From positions 186,001 to 250,000 of IMG/VR virus record IMGVR_UViG_3300030085_002431: a DNA stretch of 64,000 nt. The stretch is one strand, 5' to 3'. Both the position numbers and the translations under genes were made by a program. Below the pieces are notes generated by a model that searched no databases, had not been told where the DNA came from, and saw only the letters and a list, made by a program, of their open reading frames with translations. Shown here one piece after another: positions 12,267 through 44,545 of the stretch; position 1 is the stretch's first letter, and each line of letters begins with the position of its first letter.

Positions 12267-15200
12267 ATGCCTCTTTCAAGATTAGAGAATTTCCTTAAGA
12301 ACGCAGAAGGCAATATTCTTTATGTTAACCCTTCGGACTTCGATGCTACCGATAGTTTTGAGAACCAAGGTAACTCACTAACGAGACCTTTCAAGAGTAT
12401 TCAGAGAGCACTTGTTGAAGCCGCAAGATTTTCATATCAAGCAGGTGATAACAACGATAAGATTGATAGGACAACTATTCTAGTTTATCCTGGTACTCAT
12501 TACATTGATAACCGTCCAGGTTTTTCTATCGAAGAAATCAATGGTTCTGCAGTATTTAAGGAACAAGTTGCACCAGGACAGTGGGAAGAAAGGAGTCTTC
12601 CAGAATTTGGTGAAACTACCAACTTTGATATTTTTGACCCAGCAAACGATTTAAGAAAATATAACGCAGTTGCTGGTGGTGCAGTTCTTCCTAGAGGTAC
12701 TTCAATTATTGGTCTGGACCTAAGAAAGACAAAAATTAGACCACTATATGTTCCAGACCCATATGATAATAATGTAGAAGAATCAAGTATCTTTAATGTT
12801 ACTGGTACTTGCTACTTTACTGCTTTCACTATTTTTGACGGTGACCCAACAAAGACTGTTTATAATAACTATTCTGAAAATAGAGTAGTACCAAACTTCT
12901 CTCACCATAAATTAACAACATTTACATATATTGATGGTGTAAACAAAGTTAAGTTAGGTAATTATCAAACATACCTAACTGACCTTGACATGTATTACTA
13001 TAAGGTCGCAAAGGCATATGGTGATATAACTGGTAGAGGTCTGGCAGATTTCCCAGTTGGAACTGATTTTGAACCATCTATTGATGAATTTAGAATTGTT
13101 GGTGCTCTAGAAGCAAACCCACTAGGAATTTCTAGTATTCGTGCTGGTAATGGAGATGGTACTGGTGATATTAATGTCATCACAGTTACTACGGCAGATA
13201 GATTAACTGGTTCTACAGCACCTCATAACTTATTTGTAAATAGTCCATTCCTCCTTAACGGAGTTGAGGTTGACCCAGATTCCTATAATGGTTCATTTAC
13301 TGTTAAGGAAGTCGTTGGAATTAACACATTTACCTTCACAACAAATCAATCACCATTAGAATTTTTACCAAATCCTACAGAAATTGATACTGCAACAGTA
13401 TCTGCTGGTTCTGATACTGTAAGTTCTGCTTCACCATACATTTTCAACGTATCTTTGCGTTCCGTCTTTGGCATGTGCGGTATGCACGCTGATGGTAGCA
13501 AGGCTGCTGGTTTTAAATCAATGGTTGTGGCACAGTATACTGGTGTCTCACTACAAAAAGATGATAATGCATTCATTCTTTATGATGAAGGTGCTTTTTA
13601 TGATGAGAATACTCTCCCAGAAAATAGCCCAGAGAGACCTCTCCATACCAATTCAAAAGCAATCTTCAAACCAGATTTTGAGAACTCTCACATAAGAGCA
13701 TCCAACAATGCTTTCATTCAGGCAGTTTCTATCTTTGCTATTGGTTACTCTCATCACTTCTTGACTGAAAGTGGTGGTGATATGTCAATCACCAACTCAA
13801 ACTCCAACTTTGGTAATACATCACTCGAATCTACTGGATTCAAACCAGATGCATTTAACAGAGATGACACTGGATTCATTACACATATCATTCCACCAAG
13901 AGAATTAGTTGCTGATGAAAACTCTGTTACTTGGTTGTCTCTTGATGCTGAAAAAATTATTAATGCTGTAGATACTAGCAAACTCTATATTGCTGGTGCG
14001 AGAAATGAAGAAGTTCCACCAGCATATCAAGTTGATGGTTACAGAGTTGGTGCTAGAGACGATGATGAATTAAATCTAACTATTACTATTGGTACTGCAC
14101 AAACCAATTACACAGCACCAATTTTAATGCCAGTAAGTGGTGGAAATGGTGTATCTGCAAGAAAATCATATCAAATCGTAAGATCAAATAATGAAAATGA
14201 CATTGTAAATGATACAATTTCATTAACACAAGGTCATCAACTAATTAATGGTGAAAAAGTAAGAATTTTTGCAGATAATGGTCAAACACCAGATGGTCTA
14301 GACAATGAAGGTATTTACTTTGCAATCACAACAGGTGTTGGTGCAAATCAAATTAAACTAGCACAATCTGTTAATGATGCACTTGCTAACCAACCTATCC
14401 TAGGAATTTCTAATAACGGTGGTGTCATTACTGTTGTTTCCAGAGTTTCTGATAAACTTCCTGGAGACTTAGGACATCCAATTCAGTTTGATGAAACAGA
14501 ATCAAACTGGTATTTACAATCGGATTCAAATAACAATATCAGAGAAGCAATTGTTGATATTGGTATTACAGAACTTGGTTCAGAAACTTCAACTTCATTC
14601 ATTAATAGAAAATTAGATAATCGTTCTATTGATGATAAGATTTATAAGGTTCGTTATGTTATTCCAAAGGAATATACAAATGCAAAACCACCAGAAGCAG
14701 GATATGTAATTCAAGAATCTGGTAATGTTGGTGTTAGTAGCATTTCATTTACTAATGATACTCTTACGGATTCTACCGAGCTTAGGAATGAAAAAGTTAT
14801 TTCATCTGCATCTGCAGGTCCTATCATTTCAAATGCCCAAGTAGTAACTTTAACAACTGAACTTCCTCATGGTTTAAGTTCTGGTGATACTGTAGAAATT
14901 AAAAACGTAAGGAGTGTTAACAACTCTTTAGCAACAGGAATTACTTCTTCCTTTAATGGAAGATATGAAATTGAGTCTGTACTTAACAGCAAGCAATTCC
15001 AGTATACAATTTCTGGTGTTTCAACTAATCCTGGTGCATTTTCTAATGATATTAACCAGAGAGCAACAAGACAACAGAGAGAAGCACTACCAACTTTCTC
15101 AAGGGCAGCATTTGATAATACATTCTTTATCTACAGGGCTGCACAGGTTAAGAGACATATACCAGGAGCAGATGGACAAGATGGTATTTACCATCTAATT

Positions 15201-18200
15201 TGTTTGCAGTCCAATGTTTCTCCACCATCATCAGTTGGATTTAATCTTGATAGTAAAGAATTTAATCAAGATGTTATTAATCTCTATCCACAGTTAGATA
15301 GAGATAATCTGAACACAAACCCCAAATCATCTACATCATACGCAAATCTACAAATTCTAGGTAGTGTTGTTACAAATGATAAGAGAAATTCAATTACTAG
15401 AGAAGCAATTGATTATTTCACTAAGAATAGTTCTGTAGGTATTGCAATTACTTCTGTAATTATTGCACCAAGTCCTAATCATTCTGGTGATACTGTAACT
15501 ATTGGAACAGAAGTTGAGCACGGACTCAACAAAATTAAAGAAATAACATTTACTAGTGGTGCTGGTTATACACCATCTACTATTTTCTATTCAGTACCAT
15601 TAAACCCAATATCTTCTAGTGGAGAGGGTGCGACAGCAAAAGTAACTACAAATGCTTCAGGTGAAGTTATTGATGTTTCCTTAGTAGACCCAGGTTCTGC
15701 CTATACGACTAACAATACATTAGAAATTCCTGGAGGAACAACTAATTCTATTGTAACAGTTAGCTCAGTAGTTACTAATGCTCAAGTAACAGCAGTCGAA
15801 ATTCATGGTTACAATGAAGATTCATTCAATGGAGTTTATAAGATTGAATCAGTAAGTGGTCCCAAAACACTTATATTGGATGCACCAACTGGAATTTCAA
15901 CATATAGAGAAAATACAACTGGTGAAAAGGGTTATGTAATACCATCTAATGATATTGTTGGACTTACTTCTGCATATATGACCAATGCAGAAACAGGAAT
16001 CACAACAGTTACCGTATCATCTGCTCATGGATTGCTTCCTGGTAATTCTATTAAAATCCTATTTGACTCGGGGTCTCTTCCCAGTGGAGATTATGTTGTT
16101 AATGACGTAGTTGGACTAACAACATTTACATATGTATCTACTGGTTCAACTTCCTATCTAGATTCTTCTAGTGGTTCAATCTTAAGAAAGACACTTGCAC
16201 CTAATGCTCTTAATCTTGGTTCTGGTGAAGAAAATCTAGGTTCCCGTGCAAGTGTATTTTATGATGGACTGACTGCAACAACAAACGTACAGTTCGATAC
16301 TACAAGTTCAACAATTAGTTTCTCAAATCCTGAAGGAGTAAAAAGAGGAGACTTCTTAGATATAAGAGGTGAAATTGTTAGAGTTGCAAGTACATCTAAC
16401 CCATTTGATGTTATTCGTGGTCAACTTGGAACTGTAAAAACAAGTGCTCAATCTGGATCTAAGGTAAGAAGGATTAAGATTCTACCTATTGAGGTAAGAA
16501 GACCATCATTCATGAGAGCATCTGGACATACTTTTGAGTATCTAGGTTTCGGTCCTGGTAACTACTCAACTGGTATGCCACAAAAACAGGATAGAATCCT
16601 TAGTGAAACTGAGGTAATTGTTTCTCAGTCTAAGGAACAAAGAGGTGGTCAGGTTGTTTACACAGGTATGAATGACCTGGGTGAATTCTTCTCTGGTAGT
16701 AAGAAACTAAGTTCTGCAACTGGTGAAGAAACAGTTATTGACGCACCAATTCTTACCTATACTGGTGATGACTCACAGGGTGAATCCAGTGCAGTTTCTA
16801 GTGGTATCTTCGATGAACTACTTGTAAGACAAAGATTAACTGTTGAAGGTGGTGAGAATAATAACCAGTCTTCACAGTTCTATGGTCCTGTTAACTTTAC
16901 TCAGAAAGTTACTAACTTATCTGAATATGGCATAGAAACCAAAGACTTATTCATCAAGGGTACTGCTGCACAGTCTAAACTAATAACAGTTGGTATTTCG
17001 ACTCCAACTTCAACTACTGTCAAATCACCAAGAGTTGGTGATATTCAACTATTATCAAACCCATCCGATGGTTATATTGGACATGTAAGGGTTGATAATG
17101 AATGGAAGTCTTTTGGATTAATTAGCAGAACTGCAGATGAATTAGATGTAAGAGTTGATAAACTTCATGTCAATACTACTTCAACTAGTAATTTTGATTT
17201 TGATGTTGATGGAAACTCTAGAGTTGAAAACTTAGTTGTCTCTGGTTCAATCGTATTCCAGCAACCACAGAGTCTTGGTAATGCAACATTTGAAGACATC
17301 ATTGTAAATAGAACTGCTAGATTCACATTGATTGGTTTAGACCCAGTTACGGGTCTTTCAACAAACTATAATATGATTATGAGTGGGGGCATCTCCCAGC
17401 TGAACGACCTTGATGTAACGGGAATCTCTACATTTGCTGGAAGAGCAGACTTTGAATCTAATATATTTGGTATTGGTGCTAAGTTTGGTAATATCAGAAT
17501 TGGTATTACCGATGATAACACAATTGATACAACAGCAGGTGATATTGTTCTAAACTCTGACAATGGAACTACTAATATTGTTGACAATCTAATTGTTAAC
17601 GGTGATAAAATTGAACTTGCTAAGGGAGATGGAGTTTCTCTTGGTGGAACTATCACATCAAGAAATGATGCTAGGGTATTCCAACTTGGCATGGGTAGTA
17701 CTGATGGTGAATCTAAGATTGTTCTACACTCAAATGATACAACATCTGGACTTTCCAAAGAAGGAATTACAGCACCAGAAGGTTCTCTTACCATTCATAG
17801 AACTGCTGATAATGAAACTACTAGTACTGTTGGTGATTCTCTAATTACACACCAAGGTGCATCTGATTTAGTTGTTTCTGGTGCAAGTTCTGGAAGTAGA
17901 ATTATTTTAAAGACTGATAATACAGAACGTGTAAATGTTGGTACATCAGGAACAATAACTTTCTCAAATACAAATAATGGAACTGCTCTACAGGGACACC
18001 ATGTAAGTCTTGTTCAGTCTGGTGATGGTGATTCTGCACTATCTTGGGTACATGATAAGAACAATATTAACCAGAGATGGTATGCTGGTATTGACGCAAG
18101 TGATAACTATGCTTGGAAACTTGCACATCCAGACCCAACACTAGCATTTAATTCTGAAGATTGGAATAACTCTCAGGAAACCAAACTAACTGTTGATGCT

Positions 18201-19988
18201 AATGGCGATACAGTTGTTGGTGGTGGTTTAACTATTGGTGGTGCATTCCTAAATTCTTCAGCATCTGTCGTAACACTCTTTAGGACACCTGTTCAAGCAA
18301 CTGTACTTAATTCTGCACATACAATTAATATCGGAAGTAATTCCAATACGTCATTTGTAAACATCAGAGGAACTAAGGAAGCAAATAGTACAACTACTGG
18401 TGCATTAACTGTTGGTGGTGGTGCTGGTATTGGTGGAAACCTATATGTTGGTGGTCATATGAATGACACAGACATTCAGGGAACTCTAGATGTAACTGGA
18501 AATGTTACTGTTGGAGGGAATGAGCTTTCTATTAATGCTTCAAATGGTGATATAACAACTCAAGGAAGAGGATCATTTGGTAGTGATTGTACTATTACTG
18601 GTTACCTTGATGTATCTAGTTACATTGAGGCTGATGGAAATGGTATTTTTGGTGGTAATGTTTCTGCTGCTAAACTTATTAAGAATAACCCAGGAGCAGG
18701 AAGCAACTTCTTAAGAGCAAATGGTGAAGATTCTAAATTAACCGACCAAGACTATATTAATTCTCTTGGATTTGTTCCTGGTCAACCAGTTACTTTGAGT
18801 GCATACCCAATTGGTAACTCTATTCTTCTTAAATCTATTGATAGTCAATTTAATGGAAGTAAGCGGGAGTTTAACCTCAAAGCACCAGATGATACGAATT
18901 TCATACCAATTGGTCCTGTAAACTTACTTGTTTCACTTGGTGGTGTTATCCAAGAAGCAGGTAGAGCCTATAATATCAAACAGTCAGGTGGTACATATAC
19001 AAATGTAATTAGATTCACTGATCCACCTCCATCAGGAATGGATTGCTACATTATTGCACTTGGTGGACAAGGTTCCTTAACTGCAAACCCAGAGTGGACG
19101 AAAAAGGGTCAACTCTTGGTAGGCAAGGGCGCCAATCAAGCAAATTTACTTCCTGTTGGTTCTAATGACAAAGTTTTAACAGCAGATTCATCTACTGCAC
19201 TTGGAGTGGCATGGAAGGATATTCCACCTGGTGTTGTTACTGGTGCTATTTTTTACTGGCCAAGTACAACTATTCCTGCTGGTTATCAAAAATGTGATGG
19301 TTCTGCTGCAAAAACACAAGAACTGAGAAACATTGTTGGAAATAATGTTCCAAACATGATTAACAGGTTTGTTCTCAGTGGAAACAGTGTTGGAGGAACT
19401 GGGGGTAAGTGGCAGCATAAACTTGAACAAGATGAAATACCATACCACCGTCATACAATTACTGAAGAGGGAGACCATAACCATACCAAAGGAAAGTATA
19501 AAGCTGGTCGATCTATTGCTGTATCGCATGACGGTCACACGCACCCTGGTTCTGTTGTATCTGGTGAGGGTGGACACGACCACACTATTAGTAAGGGTGG
19601 AAAGCACTCTCATGGTTATGATGACCCTGGACATGACCACGCATACTCAGAAACAGCATTTAGTTCAAACCGTAAACTAGATGGTCAAGGAGAGAAAGCA
19701 TATAAACTTTCCAAAGATGGTTCTAGAACAGGTAAAGATGGAGTTGGAATTAAAATCAAGGCTGAAAACACTGGTCACGATCACAATATAGAGGCTAATA
19801 CTGGCAAGCACGGACATAAGGTTTCTGTTGACAAAGGTGGTGGCCATGACCATGACGTTACTATTCAACCTCATGGAAAGCACAGTCATGGTGGGAACAC
19901 TGGGTATTTTGGCAGAAATACCAACGATATTGTACCAATCCCTATTGTACCTCAATACATCTACTTAATTCCTATTATCAAAACTTAA
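12267..19988 (+). CDS. Giant virion structural/tail fibre protein with C-terminal tail-collar domain and His-x-His-rich tip
   Basis: 2573 aa; MPLSRLENFLKN N-terminus typical of cyanophage virion proteins; collar-like GAIFYW....P.GY..CDG near the C-terminus; many H.H repeats. Confidence 0.8.
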   Translation: MPLSRLENFLKNAEGNILYVNPSDFDATDSFENQGNSLTRPFKSIQRALVEAARFSYQAGDNNDKIDRTTILVYPGTHYIDNRPGFSIEEINGSAVFKEQVAPGQWEERSLPEFGETTNFDIFDPANDLRKYNAVAGGAVLPRGTSIIGLDLRKTKIRPLYVPDPYDNNVEESSIFNVTGTCYFTAFTIFDGDPTKTVYNNYSENRVVPNFSHHKLTTFTYIDGVNKVKLGNYQTYLTDLDMYYYKVAKAYGDITGRGLADFPVGTDFEPSIDEFRIVGALEANPLGISSIRAGNGDGTGDINVITVTTADRLTGSTAPHNLFVNSPFLLNGVEVDPDSYNGSFTVKEVVGINTFTFTTNQSPLEFLPNPTEIDTATVSAGSDTVSSASPYIFNVSLRSVFGMCGMHADGSKAAGFKSMVVAQYTGVSLQKDDNAFILYDEGAFYDENTLPENSPERPLHTNSKAIFKPDFENSHIRASNNAFIQAVSIFAIGYSHHFLTESGGDMSITNSNSNFGNTSLESTGFKPDAFNRDDTGFITHIIPPRELVADENSVTWLSLDAEKIINAVDTSKLYIAGARNEEVPPAYQVDGYRVGARDDDELNLTITIGTAQTNYTAPILMPVSGGNGVSARKSYQIVRSNNENDIVNDTISLTQGHQLINGEKVRIFADNGQTPDGLDNEGIYFAITTGVGANQIKLAQSVNDALANQPILGISNNGGVITVVSRVSDKLPGDLGHPIQFDETESNWYLQSDSNNNIREAIVDIGITELGSETSTSFINRKLDNRSIDDKIYKVRYVIPKEYTNAKPPEAGYVIQESGNVGVSSISFTNDTLTDSTELRNEKVISSASAGPIISNAQVVTLTTELPHGLSSGDTVEIKNVRSVNNSLATGITSSFNGRYEIESVLNSKQFQYTISGVSTNPGAFSNDINQRATRQQREALPTFSRAAFDNTFFIYRAAQVKRHIPGADGQDGIYHLICLQSNVSPPSSVGFNLDSKEFNQDVINLYPQLDRDNLNTNPKSSTSYANLQILGSVVTNDKRNSITREAIDYFTKNSSVGIAITSVIIAPSPNHSGDTVTIGTEVEHGLNKIKEITFTSGAGYTPSTIFYSVPLNPISSSGEGATAKVTTNASGEVIDVSLVDPGSAYTTNNTLEIPGGTTNSIVTVSSVVTNAQVTAVEIHGYNEDSFNGVYKIESVSGPKTLILDAPTGISTYRENTTGEKGYVIPSNDIVGLTSAYMTNAETGITTVTVSSAHGLLPGNSIKILFDSGSLPSGDYVVNDVVGLTTFTYVSTGSTSYLDSSSGSILRKTLAPNALNLGSGEENLGSRASVFYDGLTATTNVQFDTTSSTISFSNPEGVKRGDFLDIRGEIVRVASTSNPFDVIRGQLGTVKTSAQSGSKVRRIKILPIEVRRPSFMRASGHTFEYLGFGPGNYSTGMPQKQDRILSETEVIVSQSKEQRGGQVVYTGMNDLGEFFSGSKKLSSATGEETVIDAPILTYTGDDSQGESSAVSSGIFDELLVRQRLTVEGGENNNQSSQFYGPVNFTQKVTNLSEYGIETKDLFIKGTAAQSKLITVGISTPTSTTVKSPRVGDIQLLSNPSDGYIGHVRVDNEWKSFGLISRTADELDVRVDKLHVNTTSTSNFDFDVDGNSRVENLVVSGSIVFQQPQSLGNATFEDIIVNRTARFTLIGLDPVTGLSTNYNMIMSGGISQLNDLDVTGISTFAGRADFESNIFGIGAKFGNIRIGITDDNTIDTTAGDIVLNSDNGTTNIVDNLIVNGDKIELAKGDGVSLGGTITSRNDARVFQLGMGSTDGESKIVLHSNDTTSGLSKEGITAPEGSLTIHRTADNETTSTVGDSLITHQGASDLVVSGASSGSRIILKTDNTERVNVGTSGTITFSNTNNGTALQGHHVSLVQSGDGDSALSWVHDKNNINQRWYAGIDASDNYAWKLAHPDPTLAFNSEDWNNSQETKLTVDANGDTVVGGGLTIGGAFLNSSASVVTLFRTPVQATVLNSAHTINIGSNSNTSFVNIRGTKEANSTTTGALTVGGGAGIGGNLYVGGHMNDTDIQGTLDVTGNVTVGGNELSINASNGDITTQGRGSFGSDCTITGYLDVSSYIEADGNGIFGGNVSAAKLIKNNPGAGSNFLRANGEDSKLTDQDYINSLGFVPGQPVTLSAYPIGNSILLKSIDSQFNGSKREFNLKAPDDTNFIPIGPVNLLVSLGGVIQEAGRAYNIKQSGGTYTNVIRFTDPPPSGMDCYIIALGGQGSLTANPEWTKKGQLLVGKGANQANLLPVGSNDKVLTADSSTALGVAWKDIPPGVVTGAIFYWPSTTIPAGYQKCDGSAAKTQELRNIVGNNVPNMINRFVLSGNSVGGTGGKWQHKLEQDEIPYHRHTITEEGDHNHTKGKYKAGRSIAVSHDGHTHPGSVVSGEGGHDHTISKGGKHSHGYDDPGHDHAYSETAFSSNRKLDGQGEKAYKLSKDGSRTGKDGVGIKIKAENTGHDHNIEANTGKHGHKVSVDKGGGHDHDVTIQPHGKHSHGGNTGYFGRNTNDIVPIPIVPQYIYLIPIIKT

Positions 19989-21484: not shown

Positions 21485-21518
21485 ATACAAACGTAATCAT
21501 TCGATATCATTCAAAAAC

Positions 21519-21695
21519 ATGGAAGCGACTAAGATGAGAGAAACTCTCACATTGAGAGCAACAGAAATTCGTGATGAACTTCTGGAACTAGAAAAGACAT
21601 TCAATCAAAAGAAAGAACAGTTTCTTAAACTCACTGGTGCTTTAGAAGCTCTTGATCAATTAGATGCAGATGTCCCATCAACGGCAACAGAGTGA
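21519..21695 (+). CDS. Small coiled-coil protein (58 aa, not in ORF track)
   Basis: MEATKMRETL...FLKLTGALEAL; late promoter ATAAATA at 21481. Confidence 0.6.
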   Translation: MEATKMRETLTLRATEIRDELLELEKTFNQKKEQFLKLTGALEALDQLDADVPSTATE

Positions 21696-21726
21696 TTGTA
21701 AAGCAATCCTCTAGGTCATGTCAATG

Positions 21727-21755
21727 TTGACAAACGGATTATCTAGTGGTATTCT
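21727..21755 (+). promoter_or_regulatory. sigma70-type promoter
   Basis: TTGACA-17 bp-TATTCT. Confidence 0.8.
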
Positions 21756-21761
21756 AATTAA

Positions 21762-21865
21762 GTCTTGAGATGTTCTTTGCGTCTTTGAGAACTCAAGACC
21801 CGTCTTTGGTGATGGACGGTTTTTTACATAAACTGAGGAGGGGTTGGTGTCCCTCCTCTTTTTTT
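21762..21865 (+). ncRNA. Candidate small RNA (three hairpins, own promoter and terminator)
   Basis: Promoter at 21727-21755; hairpins at 21762-21799 and 21800-21819; GC stem plus T7 terminator at 21835-21865; no complete ORF inside. Confidence 0.6.
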
Positions 21866-21922
21866 GTGCCAATTTTAAAGGTGTCTACCAAACCACCCAC
21901 GCACCACCAAATGCCCTATACT
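21866..21922 (+). promoter_or_regulatory. Palindrome-linked early promoter (copy 2)
   Basis: GTGCCA-N10-TGTCTA, C-rich spacer, TATACT. Confidence 0.65.
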
Positions 21923-21948
21923 ACTAAGGTATTCAACGGACAGACCCG

Positions 21949-24081
21949 ATGGCAGTTAATCTTGAAGTCAAAGGTTCCCTGGCAAAGTGCCTGGCAACTG
22001 AAAACCTCATCATTGAACATAAGAAAGTTCCTACTGCATCTTTCGATGTTGACCGTCGTGTGCTGACTCTCCCTAACTGGGACCGAGCATCTGCAACTGT
22101 CTATGACCTTCTTGTTGGTCATGAAGTCGGTCATGCTTTGTTTACTGACAATGTTGACTGGACTGTTGAATACCCTGATGTTCCCAAAGATTTTGTGAAT
22201 GTCCTTGAAGATGTTCGTGTCGAACGTCTTATGAAGAAAAAGTTTGCTGGTCTTTCCAGAACTTTTTACAATGGATACAATGAACTGAATGATGAGGACT
22301 TCTTCTCTACTCGGGATGAAGACCTTGACAAGTGTTCTTTCATTGACCGTATCAATCTGTATTTCAAGATTGGTGCGTTCCATAACATTGCATTCTCCGA
22401 TGAAGAGAATGAATTCCTCACCCGTGCATCTCAGACAGAATCTTTTGATGATGTACTGCGTCTGTCCAAGGATGTTACTGACTTTGTAAAAGCAACAAAG
22501 CAGGAACCGATGCAATCTCCCCTCCCTCAGCAGGGACAGGGAGAGGAAGGTGAGGATGAGGAGCAGGACTCCCCTGAAACCTCCCCTGAGGGGTCTCAGG
22601 CACCCCAGGAGGACGGTCAGCAGGAACCCGTCAAGAACGGCAGCATCCCTGAGGAGAAGCAATCATCTCCTGGTGGTGGTGGCAGTCAACAGCAGGACAA
22701 TGAACTTGAGTCTAAAACTCAAGATTCTTTTGATGAGCAACTTGAAAGTCTCACTAACAAATACAGAAGTGAGGATACTTATTATGTTGAACTTCCTACC
22801 TTTGACCTGGATAAACTGATTATCACTAATGAGTATATTCATAACTACTGCGATAACTGGTATGAAAGTGCCGAAGAAAATCGTTCTTGGGTTGGTGAAG
22901 GTACTAAGATTGCCATGCGTCAGTATGCTACCTTCAAAAAATCTGCTCAGAAGGAAGTCAACTACATGGTGAAAGAGTTCGAGTGCCGTAAGTCTGCTGA
23001 CCAGTATGCTCGTTCCTCCACTGCTCGTACTGGTGTCCTTGATACAGCAAAACTTCACACTTACAAGTACAATGAAGACCTCTTCAAGAAAGTCTCTGTT
23101 GTTCCTGATGGCAAGAATCACGGTCTGATTTTCATCATTGACTGGTCTGGTTCTATGTGCAACTTTATCTTGGATGCATATAAGCAACTTTGCAGTCTGA
23201 TGTGGTTCTGTAAGAAAGTGAATATTCCTTTCGAGGTGTATGCTTTCACTCTTGAACCTTCTGCTTACATTGAGACACAACCTAACCACCCAGATACTTA
23301 CAATCGAAAAGAAGGATTGTTGGTTCCCGAATCATCTTTCCGTCTTCTCAATCTGTTTACCAGCAAGGTAAACAATCCTACTCTGGAAAAGCAGATGGGT
23401 ACTGTTTGGAAGACTGTTTACAGTCACCAATATCGTCAGTATGAGTCACCCAACATTCTGGATTTGTCTGGAACTCCTCTGGGAGAAACTATCATGGCTC
23501 TCCATCAGGTGATTCCTGCATTCCAATCTGCTAACAAACTTCAGAAGGTGAATTGTGTCTTCCTTACTGATGGTGAAGGTTATCAAAATGCCATCACTGT
23601 CAAGAAGAAAAGGTTCTATGATGATGAAGAAATCATTGGAACTACTCGTAAACCGCACGTTGCTATCCGCAATCGTAAACTTGGACGTGTTTATCCTGAA
23701 TTTGATTGGAATCATTTCCCAATGTATTCCAAGATTCTTTTGAACACTGTTCGTGATGCATTCCCTTCAGTGAATCTCATCAACTTCCGTATCACTCCTG
23801 CCCGTGAGTTTTCTAACTGCTGGCACTGGTACGGTAACGGTTCCTCCGACCTGTATGAGAAACTGAAAATGGTTTATCGTAAGCAACAGTGTGTGCAATT
23901 TGATGACACTGGTTATGACCAGTTCAATGTCCTTGCTGCATCCGCACTTAACCAAGATGATGAATTCATCGTCAAGGAAAATGCGACCAAGGCACAAATC
24001 AAAAAGAGTTTCACTAAGATGCTCGGAAGCAAGAAAACTAACAAAAAGATTCTTGGTTCCTTCATCGAACTCATTGCCTGA
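21949..24081 (+). CDS. HExxH metallopeptidase-like / vWA (CobT-like) protein, partner of the AAA+ ATPase
   Basis: HEVGH; N.LED.R; acidic linker; MIDAS DWSGSM, GTPL and FLTDGE motifs. Confidence 0.8.
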   Translation: MAVNLEVKGSLAKCLATENLIIEHKKVPTASFDVDRRVLTLPNWDRASATVYDLLVGHEVGHALFTDNVDWTVEYPDVPKDFVNVLEDVRVERLMKKKFAGLSRTFYNGYNELNDEDFFSTRDEDLDKCSFIDRINLYFKIGAFHNIAFSDEENEFLTRASQTESFDDVLRLSKDVTDFVKATKQEPMQSPLPQQGQGEEGEDEEQDSPETSPEGSQAPQEDGQQEPVKNGSIPEEKQSSPGGGGSQQQDNELESKTQDSFDEQLESLTNKYRSEDTYYVELPTFDLDKLIITNEYIHNYCDNWYESAEENRSWVGEGTKIAMRQYATFKKSAQKEVNYMVKEFECRKSADQYARSSTARTGVLDTAKLHTYKYNEDLFKKVSVVPDGKNHGLIFIIDWSGSMCNFILDAYKQLCSLMWFCKKVNIPFEVYAFTLEPSAYIETQPNHPDTYNRKEGLLVPESSFRLLNLFTSKVNNPTLEKQMGTVWKTVYSHQYRQYESPNILDLSGTPLGETIMALHQVIPAFQSANKLQKVNCVFLTDGEGYQNAITVKKKRFYDDEEIIGTTRKPHVAIRNRKLGRVYPEFDWNHFPMYSKILLNTVRDAFPSVNLINFRITPAREFSNCWHWYGNGSSDLYEKLKMVYRKQQCVQFDDTGYDQFNVLAASALNQDDEFIVKENATKAQIKKSFTKMLGSKKTNKKILGSFIELIA

Positions 24082-24160: not shown

Positions 24161-25252
24161 ATGACTGACCAAGCACTTGCTCTTCTTAAAGAAAAGTATG
24201 GCACTGAGTTCGGTGCTAATGCTGTGAAAGAAGTTGCTAAGGAATTGAATACTTCTTATGCTACTCTCTCTAAGTATCTGAACCAGTACAAGGTTGGTCG
24301 TGGTAAGTGGTCCCTGGAGCAAACTGTCCAGGAATTGGAAGAAACTCTTGCCTCCTCTGTTCCAACAATGACTTCTGTAGAGCAAAACCTTATCCCTCAG
24401 AAAGATGATTCCTTCGTCCAGTTTGGTAACTTCAGTGATATTAAAAAGGTTATTGCATCCCGCATGTTCTATCCTACGTTCATTACGGGACTCTCTGGAA
24501 ACGGTAAAACGTTCGGTGTGGAACAAGCATGTGCCCAACTCGGACGAGAACTGATTCGTGTGAACATTACAATTGAGACCGATGAAGATGACCTTATTGG
24601 TGGTTTCCGTCTTGTTGATGGTGAAACCGTCTGGCACAATGGCCCAGTCATTGAGGCCCTGCAACGGGGTGCTGTGTTGCTCCTTGACGAAATCGACCTC
24701 GCAAGCAACAAAATTCTCTGTCTTCAATCTATTCTCGAAGGAAAAGGTGTTTTCCTCAAGAAGATTGGCAAGTTCATTGCACCCTCAGAAGGTTTCCAAG
24801 TATTCGCAACCGCAAATACAAAGGGCAAAGGTTCCGACGACGGACGATTCATTGGAACTAACGTGCTCAACGAAGCATTCCTTGAACGATTCCCCGTCAC
24901 CTTTGAGCAGTCTTATCCGACAGTAGCCATTGAGTCTAAAATCTTGACTAAAGTGGCAGAGTCTCTTAACATTCCTATGGTTGGTGAGCACACTGACTTC
25001 ATTAAGCATCTGTGCGATTGGGCAGACATCATCCGCAAGACCTTCTATGATGGTGGTGTTGATGAGGTTATCTCTACCCGTCGTCTTGTTCACATTATCA
25101 AAGCATACTCTATCTTTGGTAAGAAAGACAAAGCAATGAAGGTATGTCTGAATCGTTTCGATGATGAAACCAAAGCAACCTTTGTCGAACTCTATGACAA
25201 GATTGATGCTAACTTTGAAGTCCAGGAAGATGCTCAAGTTCCTGCCAACTGA
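24161..25252 (+). CDS. cobS: CobS/MoxR-type AAA+ ATPase
   Basis: Walker A GLSGNGKT, Walker B LLLDEID, ATANTKG, NEAFLERF, ISTRRL; standard T4-like cyanophage cobS. Confidence 0.85.
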   Translation: MTDQALALLKEKYGTEFGANAVKEVAKELNTSYATLSKYLNQYKVGRGKWSLEQTVQELEETLASSVPTMTSVEQNLIPQKDDSFVQFGNFSDIKKVIASRMFYPTFITGLSGNGKTFGVEQACAQLGRELIRVNITIETDEDDLIGGFRLVDGETVWHNGPVIEALQRGAVLLLDEIDLASNKILCLQSILEGKGVFLKKIGKFIAPSEGFQVFATANTKGKGSDDGRFIGTNVLNEAFLERFPVTFEQSYPTVAIESKILTKVAESLNIPMVGEHTDFIKHLCDWADIIRKTFYDGGVDEVISTRRLVHIIKAYSIFGKKDKAMKVCLNRFDDETKATFVELYDKIDANFEVQEDAQVPAN

Positions 25253-37691: not shown

Positions 37692-37763
37692 GGGACTGTC
37701 GCATATTGGTTAATGCTCACTGCTTATAACGGTGTAAACTGGGTTCAATTCCCAGCAGTCCTA
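37692..37763 (+). tRNA. tRNA-Ile(UAU)
   Basis: Acceptor GGGACTG/CAGTCCT; anticodon stem CACTG/CGGTG with loop CTTATAA; T loop GTTCAATTC. Confidence 0.85.
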
Positions 37764-37766
37764 CTG

Positions 37767-37940
37767 AGGAACTTGAGACGTTCCCGACCAAAGGTGCCCA
37801 GCGGTTCGGATATACCGAAACCCTGTAGTTGGGAATCAGCCCCCTTTGGATATTTGCGGAGGACCTGCATCTTACTCCGTTACAAACTGTCAGTATGTTG
37901 GGTCTAGTGCCCCATAGCAAGCATACGGATAAGTGTAATG
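37767..37940 (+). ncRNA. Large structured RNA between two tRNAs (possibly manA motif)
   Basis: Pairings GGAAC/GTTCC, CCAAAGG/CCTTTGG, CCCAGC/GTTGGG, GGTTCGG/CCGAAACC, CTTACTCCGT/ACGGATAAG, GTATGTTG/CAAGCATAC; family identity from memory only. Confidence 0.6.
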
Positions 37941-37943
37941 TAT

Positions 37944-38027
37944 GGGAGTGTGGCGGAATCGGTAGACGCACCAGACTTAAAATCTGTTGGGAGTAATCCC
38001 GTGGGGGTTCAAGTCCCCCCACTCCTA
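37944..38027 (+). tRNA. tRNA-Leu(UAA)
   Basis: GGGAGTG/CACTCCT; loop CTTAAAA; long variable arm. Confidence 0.92.
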
Positions 38028-41588: not shown

Positions 41589-41673
41589 GGAGAGGTGGTC
41601 GAGTGGTTTATGGCACTGGTCTTGAAAACCAGCGATGTGCAAGCATCCGTGGGTTCAAATCCCACCCTCTCCG
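41589..41673 (+). tRNA. tRNA-Ser(UGA)
   Basis: GGAGAGG/CCTCTCC; loop CTTGAAA; long variable arm. Confidence 0.93.
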
Positions 41674-41702
41674 TTGACAGCACTAGCATTTTATGTTATA
41701 CT
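41674..41702 (+). promoter_or_regulatory. sigma70-type promoter
   Basis: TTGACA-17-TATACT with extended TG. Confidence 0.85.
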
Positions 41703-41708
41703 GTCTAG

Positions 41709-41779
41709 GTCAAGCAAATTACTTGACTGCGGTATTCCCCTTTGATGGATTCAGGAATAGCGGCGATAGGAATCCATCA
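41709..41779 (+). ncRNA. Hairpin plus H-type pseudoknot in the leader of tRNA-Val/Pro
   Basis: GTCAAG/CTTGAC; TATTCC/GGAATA crossed with TGATGGATTC/GAATCCATCA. Confidence 0.55.
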
Positions 41780-41782
41780 TAT

Positions 41783-41857
41783 GCTTGAATAGCTCAGAGG
41801 TAGAGCATCTCCTTTACACGGAGGCGGTCGGGGGTTCGATCCCCTCTTCAAGCACCA
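41783..41857 (+). tRNA. tRNA-Val(UAC)
   Basis: GCTTGAA/TTCAAGC; loop TTTACAC; encoded CCA. Confidence 0.92.
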
Positions 41858-41931
41858 CGGGACTTAGTTCAGTTTGGTAGAACGCTGCTTTTGGGAAGCA
41901 GAGGTCACAGGTTCAAATCCTGTAGTCCCGA
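41858..41931 (+). tRNA. tRNA-Pro(UGG)
   Basis: CGGGACT/AGTCCCG; loop TTTGGGA. Confidence 0.92.
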
Positions 41932-41963
41932 TTCCCTTCGGGGAACCTATCATATTCTTTATC

Positions 41964-42134
41964 ATGAAAATCAACTTATGGTATTCTAAGAGTATGTCGC
42001 AATGGCGGTGGACTCTTACAGAAGAGTTTAAGAATGGAGTTACTAAACTGGAACAGCATTCTGGTCAACACCCATTTCTTAGAGATGCTATGAATGATGT
42101 CGCTAACACAGTAGAATATCTTTTGGATAAATGA
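41964..42134 (+). CDS. Small hypothetical protein
   Basis: MKINLWYS..M.QWRWTL...LR.AM.DVA.TVEY. Confidence 0.65.
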   Translation: MKINLWYSKSMSQWRWTLTEEFKNGVTKLEQHSGQHPFLRDAMNDVANTVEYLLDK

Positions 42135-42838
42135 ACGTTATTAGTTTTCCTTCACCTTTTATTGCACAGTCTTCCATTGATGAAAAACTCCATTTGGAGT
42201 TGAAGTGTATGTACACTGAGATGGTACAAAAAGACCTGAGTCCGAATAAACAAAATTTTGCTGATGGTGACTTTAAAAGATTTAGTTCTAAAGCAAATAA
42301 TTACGAATCAGAAGTCTGGGGTGCTGGTGAATTAGAAGACTATAACGGTCGATTAGCAAAGCAACTTCAAAAAGCTTTCAATAAGGTAATTGAACATCAA
42401 CAATTTCCTCAGATATGTGTAGCTAGTAAAATTGATAAAGTATGGTGGGAGTTTTATGAACCCTATGGGTGTCGTCCAGTAGTTAATTATCCATGTTCTG
42501 ATTTTACAGGAATTTATGTAGTTGATTGTCAACAACATGATGTGATTAACTTCACTAGTCCTTTGATTTCTGTGACTTCAGGAAAGACACATTCTCCAGA
42601 AATAAAAGATGGAGATGTTCTTATTGCTCCTAGTGAACTTTTGATATCATCAAAGACATTTACTAAAAAATCTCTACTGTTCTATTTCACCATTGATTGC
42701 CAGTGGCAAGACTATGATGTTAAAACAAAAGAAGAACTATTTGGTCTTGAACAACAAAGTTCTGCTTTCAAACAAAAGTCTAGAAAAAGACTTTCTGGTT
42801 CAGTTGATGACCGTGTTAGACTGGGTGGGTATTTTTAG
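42131..42838 (+). CDS. Degenerate 2OG-Fe(II) oxygenase-like protein
   Basis: F.SP...GIY...P....GD.LI.PS.L fold motifs; metal-binding His residues not evident. Confidence 0.5.
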   Translation: MNVISFPSPFIAQSSIDEKLHLELKCMYTEMVQKDLSPNKQNFADGDFKRFSSKANNYESEVWGAGELEDYNGRLAKQLQKAFNKVIEHQQFPQICVASKIDKVWWEFYEPYGCRPVVNYPCSDFTGIYVVDCQQHDVINFTSPLISVTSGKTHSPEIKDGDVLIAPSELLISSKTFTKKSLLFYFTIDCQWQDYDVKTKEELFGLEQQSSAFKQKSRKRLSGSVDDRVRLGGYF

Positions 42839-42850
42839 GGTATGTACTAA

Positions 42851-42922
42851 TCCTCTTTAGCTCAGCGGTAGAGCGAACGACTGTTAATCGTTTGGTCCCT
42901 GGTTCGATCCCAGGAAGGGGAG
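42851..42922 (+). tRNA. tRNA-Asn(GUU)
   Basis: TCCTCTT/AAGGGGA; loop CTGTTAA. Confidence 0.92.
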
Positions 42923-42925
42923 TCT

Positions 42926-43007
42926 GTCGATGTGGCGGAATTGGTATACGCGCTGGGTTTAGGTTCCAGTGGAGCAATCCATGAAGGTTCAAGTCCTTTC
43001 ATCGACA
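42926..43007 (+). tRNA. tRNA-Leu(UAG)
   Basis: GTCGATG/CATCGAC; loop TTTAGGT; variable arm. Confidence 0.92.
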
Positions 43008-43017
43008 CTTCTTCATT

Positions 43018-43209
43018 ATGAAATTCTCTGAATATACATTTGGGGGTCGTCCTATTACTCCCATAAATCTTCTTCTTCTCATTAGTGAAATGGAAGGTAC
43101 TTACCAACATCTCAAATATATGGGATTTGAGGAAGATATGAATATTATTGATGAAATGAAGAAAAAGTACTATAAAATGTACTTCAAACTTAATAAAAAA
43201 GAAAAATGA
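43018..43209 (+). CDS. Hypothetical protein
   Basis: LISEMEG.YQHLKYMGF.EDM. Confidence 0.6.
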   Translation: MKFSEYTFGGRPITPINLLLLISEMEGTYQHLKYMGFEEDMNIIDEMKKKYYKMYFKLNKKEK

Positions 43210-43757
43210 TTAATAGGTGTTTTCCCAAAGATTTTTATATTAAGTTTGAAATTCCAAACTATGATGAACTTCTAGAATTTTGTGAAAAGAAAACTGAAGT
43301 AAACAATGAAAAGTTTACTTGGGGTGCTGATTGCAACCTGGATAGAGTTCCACTTAATGCTGAAGAGACTTCTTCTATTATTGGACCGTCTGTTCAACAA
43401 TTTGCTAAAATTCTAGGAAAAGACTTTGGATGTTATTCATCAGACCCTTGGATAAATCACTATACAAGAGGTTCTTATCAAGAGGTTCATTCTCATTCAG
43501 AAAATGATTTTGCTTCAGTATTTCTGTTGAATGATGGAGAAGAGTTTTCTCAGTTTTACTTCTATAATGAAGTGTCAATGGCAGAATCTAGATGGAGTCA
43601 TGCTGTTCCTGAGATTGCTAATAGCCAAATATATCCTATCTTAACAGAAGGTGAAGTAATTTTCTTTCCTGGTTGGTTACAACATGGTGTTACACCACAT
43701 AAAAGTGATATTGTAAGAAAAACTCTTGCATGTAATTATAATTTTGCATTTAACTAG
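43206..43757 (+). CDS. 2OG-Fe(II) oxygenase (TIGR02466-like)
   Basis: WIN.Y..G.YQE.HSH...EG..IFFP.WL.HGV.PH...RKT. Confidence 0.85.
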   Translation: MINRCFPKDFYIKFEIPNYDELLEFCEKKTEVNNEKFTWGADCNLDRVPLNAEETSSIIGPSVQQFAKILGKDFGCYSSDPWINHYTRGSYQEVHSHSENDFASVFLLNDGEEFSQFYFYNEVSMAESRWSHAVPEIANSQIYPILTEGEVIFFPGWLQHGVTPHKSDIVRKTLACNYNFAFN

Positions 43758-43830
43758 GGGGGTTTAGCTCAGTTGGTAGAGCACCTGCTTTGCAAGCAGG
43801 AAGTCAGGGGTTCGAGTCCCCTAACCTCCA
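43758..43830 (+). tRNA. tRNA-Ala(UGC)
   Basis: GGGGGTT/AACCTCC with G3:U70; loop TTTGCAA. Confidence 0.93.
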
Positions 43831-43846: not shown

Positions 43847-44302
43847 ATGAAAATAGAAGTAGAAGGTTCTCCTGTTCTCAGAAAGAAATCAAAAAGAGTT
43901 TCAAATATAAACAACGATATCCGAAAGTTTTGTGCTGAGATGGCACAGACAATGAGAGATGCAAAGGGTATTGGAATTTCAGCACCCCAGGTGGGGGTAT
44001 CTAAACGCATCATAATTGTTAATGATGGAGGAAATGATTGGGTATTGATTAACCCAGAAATTATTTGGGATGATGGTAAAAGAGTTTCTTTTAATGAGGG
44101 TTGTTTAAGTGTTCCTGGTGAATATGCAGATATTCTCAGACCAGACAGGATTAGGGTGAAATATAGAGAACTATCTGGGAGACCTCAGACTGTAGACTTA
44201 GACGGTTTATTGTCAAGGATAGTGCAACATGAAATTGACCACTTAAATGGCATTCTTTTCACAGATTACTTGACTGATAGAGGAAGTGCGATTACTATAT
44301 AA
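43847..44302 (+). CDS. def: Peptide deformylase
   Basis: GIGISAPQVG, EGCLS, QHEIDHLNG; short C-terminus. Confidence 0.95.
   Translation: MKIEVEGSPVLRKKSKRVSNINNDIRKFCAEMAQTMRDAKGIGISAPQVGVSKRIIIVNDGGNDWVLINPEIIWDDGKRVSFNEGCLSVPGEYADILRPDRIRVKYRELSGRPQTVDLDGLLSRIVQHEIDHLNGILFTDYLTDRGSAITI
44270..44298 (+). promoter_or_regulatory. sigma70-type promoter for tmRNA (inside def 3' end)
   Basis: TTGACT-17-TACTAT. Confidence 0.7.
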
Positions 44303-44304
44303 AG

Positions 44305-44545
44305 TGTTCAAGAGGTTGCGAAGTCTGTTGTTTTGGACAGGGGTTCGATTCCCCTCACCTCCATTCATGGGGGTGCCATGGTTTCGACAGGGCAAAAAGG
44401 TCGTAATTGTTGACGGGACATAAACATAGATGCAAACACATCTGAAACCGCAGCAAATAACATTGTTGCATTCTCCCGCAGCACCGTTGCTGCCTGAATG
44501 GGGGATGGGGGATAAGTCTTCCTTCTAATCCAATAGACTCTTGGG
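44305..44545 (+). ncRNA. ssrA: Circularly permuted (two-piece) tmRNA, cyanobacterial type
   Basis: T arm GGGGTTCGATTCCCC plus CACCTCCA (to 44363) precedes the 5' piece GGGGGTG..GGTTTCGAC (from 44369); G3:U70; tag ORF 44453-44497 ANNIVAFSRSTVAA*. Confidence 0.9.

What the first reader, a model, noticed from the sequence alone, without database searches (positions are those of the whole stretch)
21727..21865. Stand-alone ~105 nt small RNA with two UUGGUG-loop hairpins
Seen: a near-consensus promoter (TTGACA-17-TATTCT), a long hairpin, a second hairpin CCGTCT-ttggtgat-GGACGG, and a terminator GAGGAGGG-gttggtgt-CCCTCCTC-T7. Both of the last two loops display TTGGTG, and no complete ORF lies between promoter and terminator. 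Inference: an sRNA with repeated loop motifs, such as a protein-sponge or decoy RNA. From memory, paired UGGYG elements describe the cyanophage wcaG motif, but I cannot confirm the match.
Basis: partly seen in the sequence, partly recalled or inferred. Interest (0 to 1): 0.65.

Follow-up and report, generated by a model that had tools for sequence, protein, structure and literature searches.

The report
Conserved small RNA gene in cyanophages
The flagged stretch is a real, conserved gene for a roughly 100-nucleotide structured RNA, found only in an uncultured group of T4-like cyanophages and in no catalogued RNA family; its function is still unknown.

Summary
Window 21727-21865 holds a sigma-70-type promoter, two adjacent hairpins and a strong intrinsic terminator. 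Both 3' loops display UUGGUG.

Comparative data show this is a gene, not chance. I recovered about 80-90 distinct variants from viral and metagenome contigs.
- Promoter geometry is fixed: 17-nt spacer and 6 nt from the -10 to the RNA's 5' G in 91 of 91 variants, while the spacer sequence drifts.
- All three helices keep pairing through compensatory changes (97.5-99.8% of cells paired; slid controls 40-67%).
- Lengths are 94-103 nt with no conserved reading frame.
- GGUG is kept in the hairpin-2 loop, and again in the terminator loop or the linker.
- Among all terminator-like hairpins in two complete genomes, only this RNA's carry GGUG loops.

Rfam (wcaG included) gives no match, and neither do GenBank phages or bacterial genomes.

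The element is a clade-specific addition of about 130 nt (promoter, hairpin 1, hairpin 2) in front of an ancestral terminator. It lies upstream of the cobT-like peptidase gene of psbA-carrying myoviruses.

Best reading: an independently transcribed early phage sRNA that acts in trans through its exposed GGUG motifs. The target is unknown and transcription is not shown. The main rival is a cis-acting leader or antitermination element.

The parts
21727..21755 (+). Promoter of the small RNA: -35 TTGACA (21727-21732), 17-nt spacer, TG at 21747-21748, -10 TATTCT (21750-21755). The predicted start is at or near G21762.
   Evidence: In 91 distinct relatives the -35 is TTGACA in 86, the spacer is 17 nt in 91, the -10 fits TAnnnT in 90, and the distance from the -10 to the RNA's 5' G is 6 nt in 91. 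The spacer sequence itself is not conserved.
21762..21799 (+). Hairpin 1: an imperfect stem of about 13 bp capped by a 9-nt loop (UGCGUCUUU here; family consensus UGUAnCUUU), closed by CUU/GAG.
   Evidence: Fold. Of 52 distinct hairpin-1 sequences, 51 fold to the same stem-loop, with stems that differ and compensate.
21800..21819 (+). Hairpin 2, directly abutting hairpin 1: 6-bp stem CCGUCU/GGACGG and an 8-nt loop UUGGUGAU (21806-21813). In this genome it is followed by U6 (21820-21825), so a shorter form of about 64 nt is possible.
   Evidence: Stem pairs covary (C-G/U-A 43:27; C-G/U-G/U-A at the closing pairs). GGUG is present in the loop in every protein-anchored relative that has the element.
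21820..21834 (+). Single-stranded linker. It has diverged in this genome. In most relatives it carries UAGUGU or (A/G)GGUGGAACA.
   Evidence: Alignments A3 and A5.
21835..21865 (+). Intrinsic terminator and 3' end of the RNA: 9-bp G-rich stem (21835-21843 with 21850-21858), loop UUGGUG (21844-21849), then U7 (21859-21865).
   Evidence: Six of seven stem pairs show compensatory change. Of 28 terminator-like hairpins in the whole genome, only this one and hairpin 2 have GGTG in the loop. The stem and linker are homologous to the terminator at the same place in ordinary marine cyanomyoviruses.
21695..21732 (-). Divergent promoter-like module ('unit B') on the minus strand: -35 TTGACA (21724-21719), 18-nt spacer, -10 TACAAT (21700-21695), then a conserved leader (CACTCTGTTG...) running leftwards from about 21694 into the end of the 58-aa ORF. 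Its -35 forms a palindrome with the small RNA's -35 (21719-21732).
   Evidence: 11 of 12 match. More than 100 distinct variants are conserved in relatives, usually 72-75 nt from the small RNA and divergent. In some loci it is in the opposite orientation, reading toward the peptidase gene. There are three more copies in this genome.
21519..21695 (+). Upstream neighbour: a 58-aa ORF (phrog_580, unknown function).
   Evidence: It is present upstream in only some relatives.
21867..21948 (+). Spacer between the terminator and the peptidase gene. It holds a weak TGnCAATTT (21867-21875), a C/A-rich tract (21887-21911) that contains CACCAA complementary to the loops, and a -10-like TATACT (21917-21922).
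   Evidence: In 69 of 87 relatives a TGnTAnnnT motif follows the terminator directly, and in 62 of 87 the peptidase ATG lies 32-36 nt after the RNA. The extra 50 nt or so is specific to the window's subclade.
21949..24081 (+). Downstream neighbour: the 710-aa cobT-like 'peptidase' gene (HExxH motif and a VWA-type DxSxS motif), followed by a cobS/MoxR-like ATPase gene at 24161-25252.
   Evidence: phrog_459 at E = 1.8e-248 and phrog_249 at E = 1.4e-133. Best GenBank phage relatives are Synechococcus phages at 47% identity or less.

Best explanation
The stretch is a gene for a non-coding RNA of about 98-104 nt, carried by one uncultured clade of T4-like, psbA-carrying cyanomyoviruses.

A sigma-70-type promoter, and therefore probably early transcription by unmodified host RNA polymerase, would start the RNA at the first base of hairpin 1. 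The RNA would end at a strong intrinsic terminator. That terminator is the ancestral one found in front of the cobT-like peptidase gene.

The RNA displays three conserved single-stranded pieces: the hairpin-1 loop UGUAnCUUU, the hairpin-2 loop with UGGUG(G/A)U, and a second GGUG in the terminator loop or the linker.

I think it most likely acts in trans as a regulatory RNA. The G-rich GGUG motifs would serve as duplicated seeds that pair with CACC/CCACC-containing RNA, most likely of the host.

Shown: conservation, structure, promoter and terminator signals, non-coding nature, single copy, and clade restriction. Inferred: that it is transcribed as a discrete molecule, that it is early, that it acts in trans, and what it binds.
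For: - Promoter geometry is invariant in 91 distinct variants while the spacer sequence drifts.
- Three helices are supported by covariation. On 26 sequences 99.8% of cells pair, with 6 pairs showing compensatory change. On 71 sequences 97.5% pair, with 9 such pairs. Slid controls give 40-67%.
- Of 52 different hairpin-1 sequences, 51 fold the same way.
- There is no conserved frame, and lengths are 94-103 nt.
- GGTG occurs a median of 3 times per element against 0.8 expected.
- GGTG loops occur in no other terminator-like hairpin of two complete genomes.
- In a set found through the protein, not the RNA, 24 of 40 clade loci carry the element, and all keep GGUG in the hairpin-2 loop.
- The downstream gene keeps a promoter-like TGnTAnnnT of its own right after the terminator (69 of 87). 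It has the same arrangement in relatives that lack the RNA.
- In some loci a homing-endonuclease-like ORF or a second promoter module separates the RNA from the peptidase gene, yet the RNA unit stays intact.
Against: - No transcript is shown. The only RNA-library signal is one 202-nt assembled contig (21696-21897). It also covers the promoter and runs past the terminator, so it may be DNA carry-over or read-through.
- No target was found. Duplex scoring against translation-start regions of two complete phage genomes gave nothing beyond what the number of tests would yield. CACCA and CCACC are depleted in phage start regions, not enriched.
- No host genome could be searched.
- The strict position upstream of one gene also fits a cis-acting role.
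- Part of the sequence set was retrieved with patterns that require the hairpin-1 loop and TGGTG. Conservation of those two pieces is therefore partly built in for that subset. The protein-anchored set and the terminator loop are free of this bias.
Confidence: 0.45

Rival explanations
1. It is a cis-acting leader of the peptidase-cobS operon. The promoter plus two adjacent hairpins would modify transcription at the terminator that follows. This could be a conditional attenuator. It could also be a factor-independent antitermination RNA of the kind known from phage HK022 (put sites: two stem-loops just downstream of an early promoter that make the polymerase read through terminators; recalled from memory).
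For: The element lies in the same orientation directly upstream of the peptidase gene in most loci. The clade-specific insertion (promoter, hairpin 1, hairpin 2) sits upstream of an ancestral terminator, where a bare promoter could not drive the downstream gene. Hairpins 1 and 2 abut with no spacer.
Against: - RNAalifold or visual inspection did not show a conserved alternative (antiterminator) pairing.
- The downstream gene keeps its own promoter-like motif after the terminator in 69 of 87 variants.
- Relatives without the element have the same terminator-promoter-gene arrangement.
- In the L106 group a complete second promoter module lies between the RNA and the gene, and in L088 and L100 a whole ORF does.
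- The terminator loop carries a conserved, RNA-specific GGUG in most lineages, which is not expected for a mere terminator to be read through.
Confidence: 0.2
2. It is a discrete small RNA, but it works as a protein decoy or sponge, or as the RNA partner of a protein. The repeated exposed GGUG motifs would bind a host or phage RNA-binding protein rather than pair with RNA. One candidate partner is the neighbouring VWA/peptidase-MoxR pair.
For: Each molecule has two to three single-stranded GGUG copies, and their position can move between the terminator loop and the linker while the number is kept. No RNA target was detected in the phage. Synteny with the VWA-domain gene persists.
Against: No candidate binding protein was identified. 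The hairpin-1 loop is also highly conserved but carries a different sequence. Relatives have the peptidase and ATPase genes without the RNA, and common descent alone explains the synteny.
Confidence: 0.15
3. There is no separate function. The stretch would be tandem terminators of the upstream genes plus promoters of the neighbouring genes, and the 'RNA gene' would be an accident of packing signals into an intergenic gap.
For: The linker and terminator are homologous to a generic terminator-promoter cassette of cyanomyoviruses. In the window, hairpin 2 also looks like a terminator.
Against: Hairpin 1 and hairpin 2 are not terminators in most variants, because no U-run follows them. Yet they are conserved in structure with compensatory changes, and in loop sequence, across about 80 variants. 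The promoter keeps an exact 6-nt distance to hairpin 1 in 91 of 91 variants. Upstream genes differ between loci while the unit stays the same.
Confidence: 0.04

Closest known systems
wcaG RNA motif (Rfam RF01761; Weinberg et al. 2010, PMC2864571)
   Same: Both are structured RNAs found in T4-like cyanophages and aquatic metagenomes.
   Different: The Rfam covariance model gives no match, even at E <= 10. wcaG is described as a 5'-UTR candidate riboswitch of exopolysaccharide and high-light genes. This element has its own promoter and terminator and precedes a cobT-like peptidase gene.
Phage-encoded trans-acting small RNAs in general (reviewed in PMC12197685; for example the sRNA of bioRxiv 10.1101/2024.10.31.621285)
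   Same: It shares the architecture: a short non-coding unit with its own promoter, a 5' hairpin, exposed conserved loops and an intrinsic terminator, carried by a phage.
   Different: It has no sequence or model similarity to any described family. It is found in lytic T4-like cyanophages, for which the non-coding RNAs listed in the literature I read are CfrI, PhotoRC-II, wcaG, manA, glnA and abiF (PMC9964418). The target and the expression are unknown.
Small RNAs with repeated loop motifs: CsrB/RsmZ (GGA loops that titrate CsrA) and RoxS/RsaE (several C-rich loops that pair with G-rich ribosome-binding sites). Recalled from memory.
   Same: The same short motif is shown two or three times in unpaired positions of one small RNA.
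   Different: The motif here is GGUG(G), not GGA or CCCC. No CsrA-type partner is known in cyanobacteria (from memory). No binding partner was tested.
HK022 put RNAs (cis-acting antitermination). Recalled from memory.
   Same: The order is the same: promoter, then two adjacent stem-loops, then a terminator, then genes.
   Different: There is no sequence similarity to test against. The downstream gene has its own promoter-like motif. The terminator loop itself is conserved.
Generic terminator-promoter cassette of cyanomyoviruses, at the same position upstream of the peptidase gene
   Same: The linker, G-rich terminator stem, U-run and following -10-like motif are homologous (weak R1 matches, all ending about 30 nt before the gene).
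   Different: Ordinary marine cyanomyoviruses and phage DSL-LC02 lack the promoter, hairpin 1, hairpin 2 and the GGUG loop.

Membership tests
wcaG RNA motif (RF01761) | A match to the family covariance model at or above its gathering score | tested here: not met
   There is no wcaG match on the window at the gathering score. There is none at E <= 10 in 21500-22100. There is none in 13 related loci.
wcaG RNA motif (RF01761) | A location in the 5' UTR of exopolysaccharide-related or high-light-induced genes (PMC2864571) | tested here: not met
   The downstream gene is the cobT-like peptidase (phrog_459), followed by a cobS-like ATPase.
Independent small-RNA gene (promoter to intrinsic terminator, non-coding) | Its own promoter, conserved in sequence and position | tested here: met
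   The -35 is TTGACA in 86 of 91 variants. The 17-nt spacer and the 6-nt distance to the RNA 5' end hold in 91 of 91. The spacer is not conserved.
Independent small-RNA gene (promoter to intrinsic terminator, non-coding) | An intrinsic terminator at the 3' end | tested here: met
   A 9-bp G-rich stem plus U7. The stem covaries in relatives.
Independent small-RNA gene (promoter to intrinsic terminator, non-coding) | A conserved secondary structure with compensatory changes and no conserved reading frame | tested here: met
Independent small-RNA gene (promoter to intrinsic terminator, non-coding) | A discrete transcript of the predicted size | not testable with these tools
   Only assembled contigs of RNA libraries were served. 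One 202-nt contig lies at 21696-21897, which shows neither ends nor transcription.
Riboswitch or transcription attenuator leader | Mutually exclusive terminator and antiterminator structures, conserved across members | tested here: inconclusive
   The consensus folds show only the three hairpins. No alternative pairing was seen, but no dedicated search for one was run.
Riboswitch or transcription attenuator leader | The downstream gene depends on the leader's promoter | tested here: not met
   A TGnTAnnnT motif follows the terminator in 69 of 87 variants. Relatives lacking the element keep the same gene start region. Other units are inserted between the element and the gene in some loci. This rests on sequence only.
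CsrB/RsmZ-type protein sponge | Multiple GGA motifs in hairpin loops and a CsrA/RsmA partner | tested here: not met
   The loops carry GGUG, not A(N)GGA. No partner was searched for.
Known cyanobacterial or cyanophage RNA families in Rfam (Yfr1, Yfr2 family, PhotoRC, manA, glnA, abiF and others) | A match to any family model | tested here: not met
   In the window only tRNAs and tmRNA reach the gathering score. At E <= 10 the element region gives only chance-level matches to mir-627 and a snoRNA.

The most novel reading that the evidence does not exclude
The RNA is a decoy for the 3' ends of tRNA-like molecules. Its exposed UGGUG(G) motifs, and UGGUGGA in many variants, are complementary to ...CACCA-3' and ...UCCACCA-3' acceptor ends. 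Those are the ends of many tRNAs, tRNA-Ala and tmRNA (recalled from memory). The loops would read CCA ends the way the T-box UGGN bulge or the RNase P P15 loop does. An early phage RNA could thereby capture or shield uncharged tRNA or tmRNA during takeover. Nothing here tests it. The one indirect check found no co-occurrence with a phage tmRNA gene: a complete genome that carries the RNA has no tmRNA gene.
Probability: 0.03. Interest if true: 0.9.

Novelty: new member of a known kind. Interest (0 to 1): 0.5.

Why it matters
No trans-acting small RNA of a lytic cyanophage has been characterised. The non-coding RNAs listed for T4-like cyanophages in the papers I read are an antisense RNA and Rfam cis-regulatory motifs.

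This family is compact and structurally well defined. It has about 80-90 natural variants that already serve as a mutational map. It is restricted to an uncultured clade of psbA-carrying myoviruses that occurs in many public aquatic metagenome contigs.

If it is an early riboregulator, it gives a direct handle on how these phages reprogram picocyanobacteria at the RNA level. If it is instead a cis-acting antitermination device, it would be the first in a T4-like phage.

In either case it merits an Rfam entry (alignments A3 and A5, model R1). It also shows how a new RNA gene can form by placing a promoter and two hairpins in front of an existing terminator.

Tried and rejected
1. wcaG or any other Rfam family: no match.
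2. Paralogues in the same genome: none. blastn-short finds only the element itself. The R1 model finds one strong hit plus weak terminator-only hits. The weak hits in the window (46935-47041) and in L111 are generic terminator cassettes.
3. GenBank phage isolates: no DNA match to the window region or to a typical family member. The nearest peptidase (phage DSL-LC02, 47%) has a 70-nt gap without the element.
4. A host-derived origin: a pattern scan of one genome per bacterial and archaeal species gave two hits in unrelated MAGs. That is about the chance number, and their model scores were 16 bits and none.
5. Expression: runs holding the phage are marine metagenomes from 7 studies. The RNA runs were available only as contigs and were uninformative.
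6. The downstream CACCAA tract as a conserved partner of the loops: it is confined to the window's subclade.
7. Pairing between the hairpin-1 loop and the 'unit B' leader, or between hairpin 2 and the peptidase start region: inspection of variants showed no consistent covariation.
8. Targets among phage translation-start regions in two complete genomes: the best conserved candidate is a 242-aa gene at genome position 178077, paired with hairpin 2. It is no better than expected from about 300 tests. CACCA and CCACC are depleted in phage start regions.
9. A link to the phage tmRNA: a complete genome that carries the RNA lacks a tmRNA gene.
10. A small peptide: there is no conserved frame or start codon.

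Full report
**What is in the window.** The 253-nt gap lies between a 58-aa ORF (21519-21695, phrog_580) and a 710-aa cobT-like 'peptidase' gene (21949-24081, phrog_459), which is followed by a cobS-like ATPase gene.
- -35 TTGACA at 21727-21732;
- a 17-nt spacer with TG at 21747-21748;
- -10 TATTCT at 21750-21755;
- hairpin 1 at 21762-21799;
- hairpin 2 at 21800-21819, loop UUGGUGAU, followed by U6;
- a 15-nt linker;
- a terminator at 21835-21858, loop UUGGUG, followed by U7.

The RNA from 21757 to 21865 folds at -37.9 kcal/mol, z = -3.68. The promoter scan scores the promoter 10 of 12 and lists both 3' hairpins as terminator-like.

On its own this is suggestive only. TTGGTG is a frequent hexamer here (109 copies against 46 expected). 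The genome has 26 TTGACA-N16-18-TAnnnT sites, and I estimate about 14 would arise from base composition.

**The genome.** The window is 186001-250000 of a 250,613-bp single-contig viral record that CheckV rates as complete. It encodes psbA and high-light-inducible-like proteins, ten tRNAs and a cyanobacterial-type tmRNA. Its peptidase is closest to those of Synechococcus phages, at 47% identity or less. It is therefore a divergent, uncultured T4-like cyanomyovirus. Its DNA is held by marine-metagenome runs from seven studies.

**Relatives.** The peptidase protein and short DNA patterns brought in related loci from IMG/VR and JGI/ENA metagenomes.

The first informative one was L003, found through the protein (60% identity). 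It has the same unit at the same place: TTGACA-17-TATGAT, the same 6-nt distance to GUCUUGAG, and compensatory changes in all three stems.

I built alignment A3 (26 distinct sequences) and model R1. R1 then found 99 copies in 100 sources, giving 71 distinct rows in alignment A5.

Part of this set was fished with patterns that demand the hairpin-1 loop and TGGTG. I therefore also made a set anchored on the protein alone (alignment A4). Of 40 loci whose peptidase is at least 51% identical to the window's, 24 carry the element. All of these have GGUG in the hairpin-2 loop.

**Structure.**
- On A3, 99.8% of cells form standard pairs, and 6 of 19 pairs show changes on both sides. Sliding the 3' partners drops pairing to 42-67%.
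- On A5, 97.5% pair, 9 pairs are compensatory and 112 cells changed on both sides. Slid controls give 40-59%. A5 is fitted to the model, so it leans towards this structure.
- Hairpin 1 is too variable in register for a column-wise count. Folded one by one, 51 of 52 distinct hairpin-1 sequences give the same design: a bulged stem of 11-14 bp whose sequence differs widely (ACAAC/GUUGU, GCAAC/GUUGC, ACAUC/GAUGU, GGUC/GACC and others), with a constant 9-nt loop UGUAnCUUU.

**Promoter.** In 91 distinct combinations of upstream region and RNA:
- the -35 is TTGACA in 86;
- the spacer is 17 nt in all 91;
- the -10 fits TAnnnT in 90;
- the -10 ends 6 nt before the RNA's first G in all 91;
- most spacer positions are poorly conserved, and no spacer position is as conserved as the hexamers.

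This is the signature of a working promoter that starts the RNA at the foot of hairpin 1. In T4-type phages sigma-70-like promoters are the early class. That is established knowledge for T4 and an inference here.

**Non-coding.** Lengths run from 94 to 103 nt. Which frame is free of stops differs among variants, and half of them have no ATG at all.

**The repeated motif.**
- GGTG occurs a median of three times per element, against 0.8 expected from its own composition.
- It is always present in the hairpin-2 loop: UUGGUGGU, UGUGGUGG, AGUGGUGU, or GGUGGUGGAA in a lineage with a longer, covarying stem.
- The second copy is in the terminator loop in the main clade and in the very divergent L106 group (GUGGUG, GUGGUA).
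- In another subclade the terminator has a UUCG-type loop, and the second copy sits in the linker as (A/G)GGUGGAACA.
- A scan of all terminator-like hairpins found GGTG loops only in this RNA: 2 of 28 in the window's genome and 1 of 13 in a second complete genome.

**Origin.** Ordinary marine cyanomyoviruses give only weak R1 matches (10-20 bits). All of them end about 30 nt before the peptidase start. Their sequence there is a stop codon, a short linker, a G-rich terminator, a U-run, a -10-like TATAAT and then the gene. The linker and terminator are recognisably the same as in the RNA. The promoter, hairpin 1 and hairpin 2 are absent. The same holds for clade members without the element and for phage DSL-LC02. 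The RNA gene thus looks like an addition of about 130 nt in front of a pre-existing terminator.

**Independence from the neighbour.**
- Directly after the terminator, 69 of 87 variants have TGnTAnnnT, an extended -10-like motif. The peptidase ATG follows 32-36 nt after the RNA in 62 of 87 variants, and 86-87 nt after it in the window's subclade, which has an extra C/A-rich tract.
- In L088/L089 and L100 a homing-endonuclease-like ORF sits between the RNA and the gene.
- In the L106 group a second complete promoter-leader module does.
- Upstream genes differ between loci.

Together these favour a self-contained unit over a leader, though they do not exclude some read-through.

**What it is not.**
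- Rfam 15 gives nothing at the gathering score, nothing at E <= 10, and no match at the element in 13 related loci. The wcaG lead therefore fails.
- GenBank phages have no DNA match.
- A pattern scan of one genome per prokaryotic species gave two chance-level hits outside cyanobacteria.
- The element is single-copy in its genome.

**Function.** I could not determine it.
- Expression could not be tested. RNA libraries were served only as contigs. One 202-nt contig at 21696-21897 covers the promoter as well, and so proves nothing.
- A duplex screen of the four exposed segments against start regions of two complete genomes, with orthologue pairing, gave no hit beyond expectation.
- The complementary words CACCA and CCACC are under-represented in phage start regions. 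This fits a host target or plain AT-richness.
- A link to the phage tmRNA is not supported.

I commit to a trans-acting early small RNA that uses duplicated GGUG seeds (0.45). The rivals are a cis-acting leader or put-like antitermination element (0.2), a protein decoy or RNP partner (0.15), and no separate function (0.04).

**Verdict.** The feature is real and conserved, and it is a new RNA family of a familiar kind.

Noticed in passing
window 21724-21660 minus strand; also genome positions +124851, +39910 and -89344 (G000); L096, L097, L102 and L106: This is a recurrent promoter-plus-leader module: TTGACA, 17-18 nt, TA(A/G)(A/G)AT, then immediately (C/A/G)A(C/G)TCTGT..GG.TT.AAG. It is conserved in more than 100 variants. 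Next to the small RNA it is usually divergent, and the two -35 boxes form a palindrome. In some relatives it is flipped and reads toward the peptidase gene. One of the other copies in this genome sits 60 nt upstream of a 146-aa GIY-YIG-like ORF. It may be an early-promoter type or the front end of mobile endonuclease cassettes.
   Followed up: partly
L044, L056, L059, L062, L064, L066, L069, L048 and others (promoter spacer of the small RNA): In about 27 of 91 variants the promoter spacer contains a perfect 10-11-nt complement of the RNA's 5' arm (for example ACCCTCAAGAC with GTCTTGAGGGT), and it covaries with that arm (ACC/GGT, CCC/GGG, TCC/GGA). The -10 box thus lies in the loop of a potential hairpin in any read-through transcript, or in a cruciform. 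This feature is absent from the window's own copy.
   Followed up: partly
window 21887-21913: A C/A-rich tract (ACCAAACCACCCACGCACCACCAAATG) lies in an AT-rich genome between the terminator and the peptidase gene. It contains CACCAA, which is complementary to the loops, and looks like a relic of an older 5' UTR and start codon (compare ...CACACCAGATGCCC in L042-type loci). It occurs only in the window's subclade.
   Followed up: partly
window 44274-44558; tRNAs at 12084, 37692-38027, 41589-43830 and 48393: The phage carries a cyanobacterial-type (permuted) tmRNA gene (133.6 bits) and ten tRNA genes. A complete relative that has the small RNA has no tmRNA gene.
   Followed up: partly
L088:737-1500, L089 and L100:1110-1500: Homing-endonuclease-like ORFs (one with a CxxCH...H HNH-type motif) are inserted between the small RNA and the peptidase gene. 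The gap appears to be an insertion hotspot.
   Followed up: no
L066:8153-8189: An abiF RNA motif (RF03085, 50.7 bits) lies next to a tRNA gene in a related phage contig. The same motif is reported for cyanophage S-CREM1 (PMC9964418).
   Followed up: no
window 46990-47050; L111:4060-4125; upstream of the peptidase gene in L004-L038: A generic intergenic cassette recurs in these cyanomyoviruses: a stop codon, A(C/G)TGTC(A/C)AC, a G-rich hairpin, a T-run, then (T)GTATAnT. That is a terminator immediately followed by a -10-like box.
   Followed up: partly
window 12267-19988: A single 2573-aa ORF lies on the + strand, a few kb upstream. It is followed by a 2OG-Fe(II) oxygenase-like ORF and a tail-fibre-like ORF.
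   Followed up: no
whole window: TTGGTG is strongly strand-biased (80 copies on + and 29 on -) and more than twice as frequent as shuffles predict. The likely cause is Val/Gly codon usage of the mostly +-strand genes. This is a caveat for reading single TTGGTG occurrences as signals.
   Followed up: no
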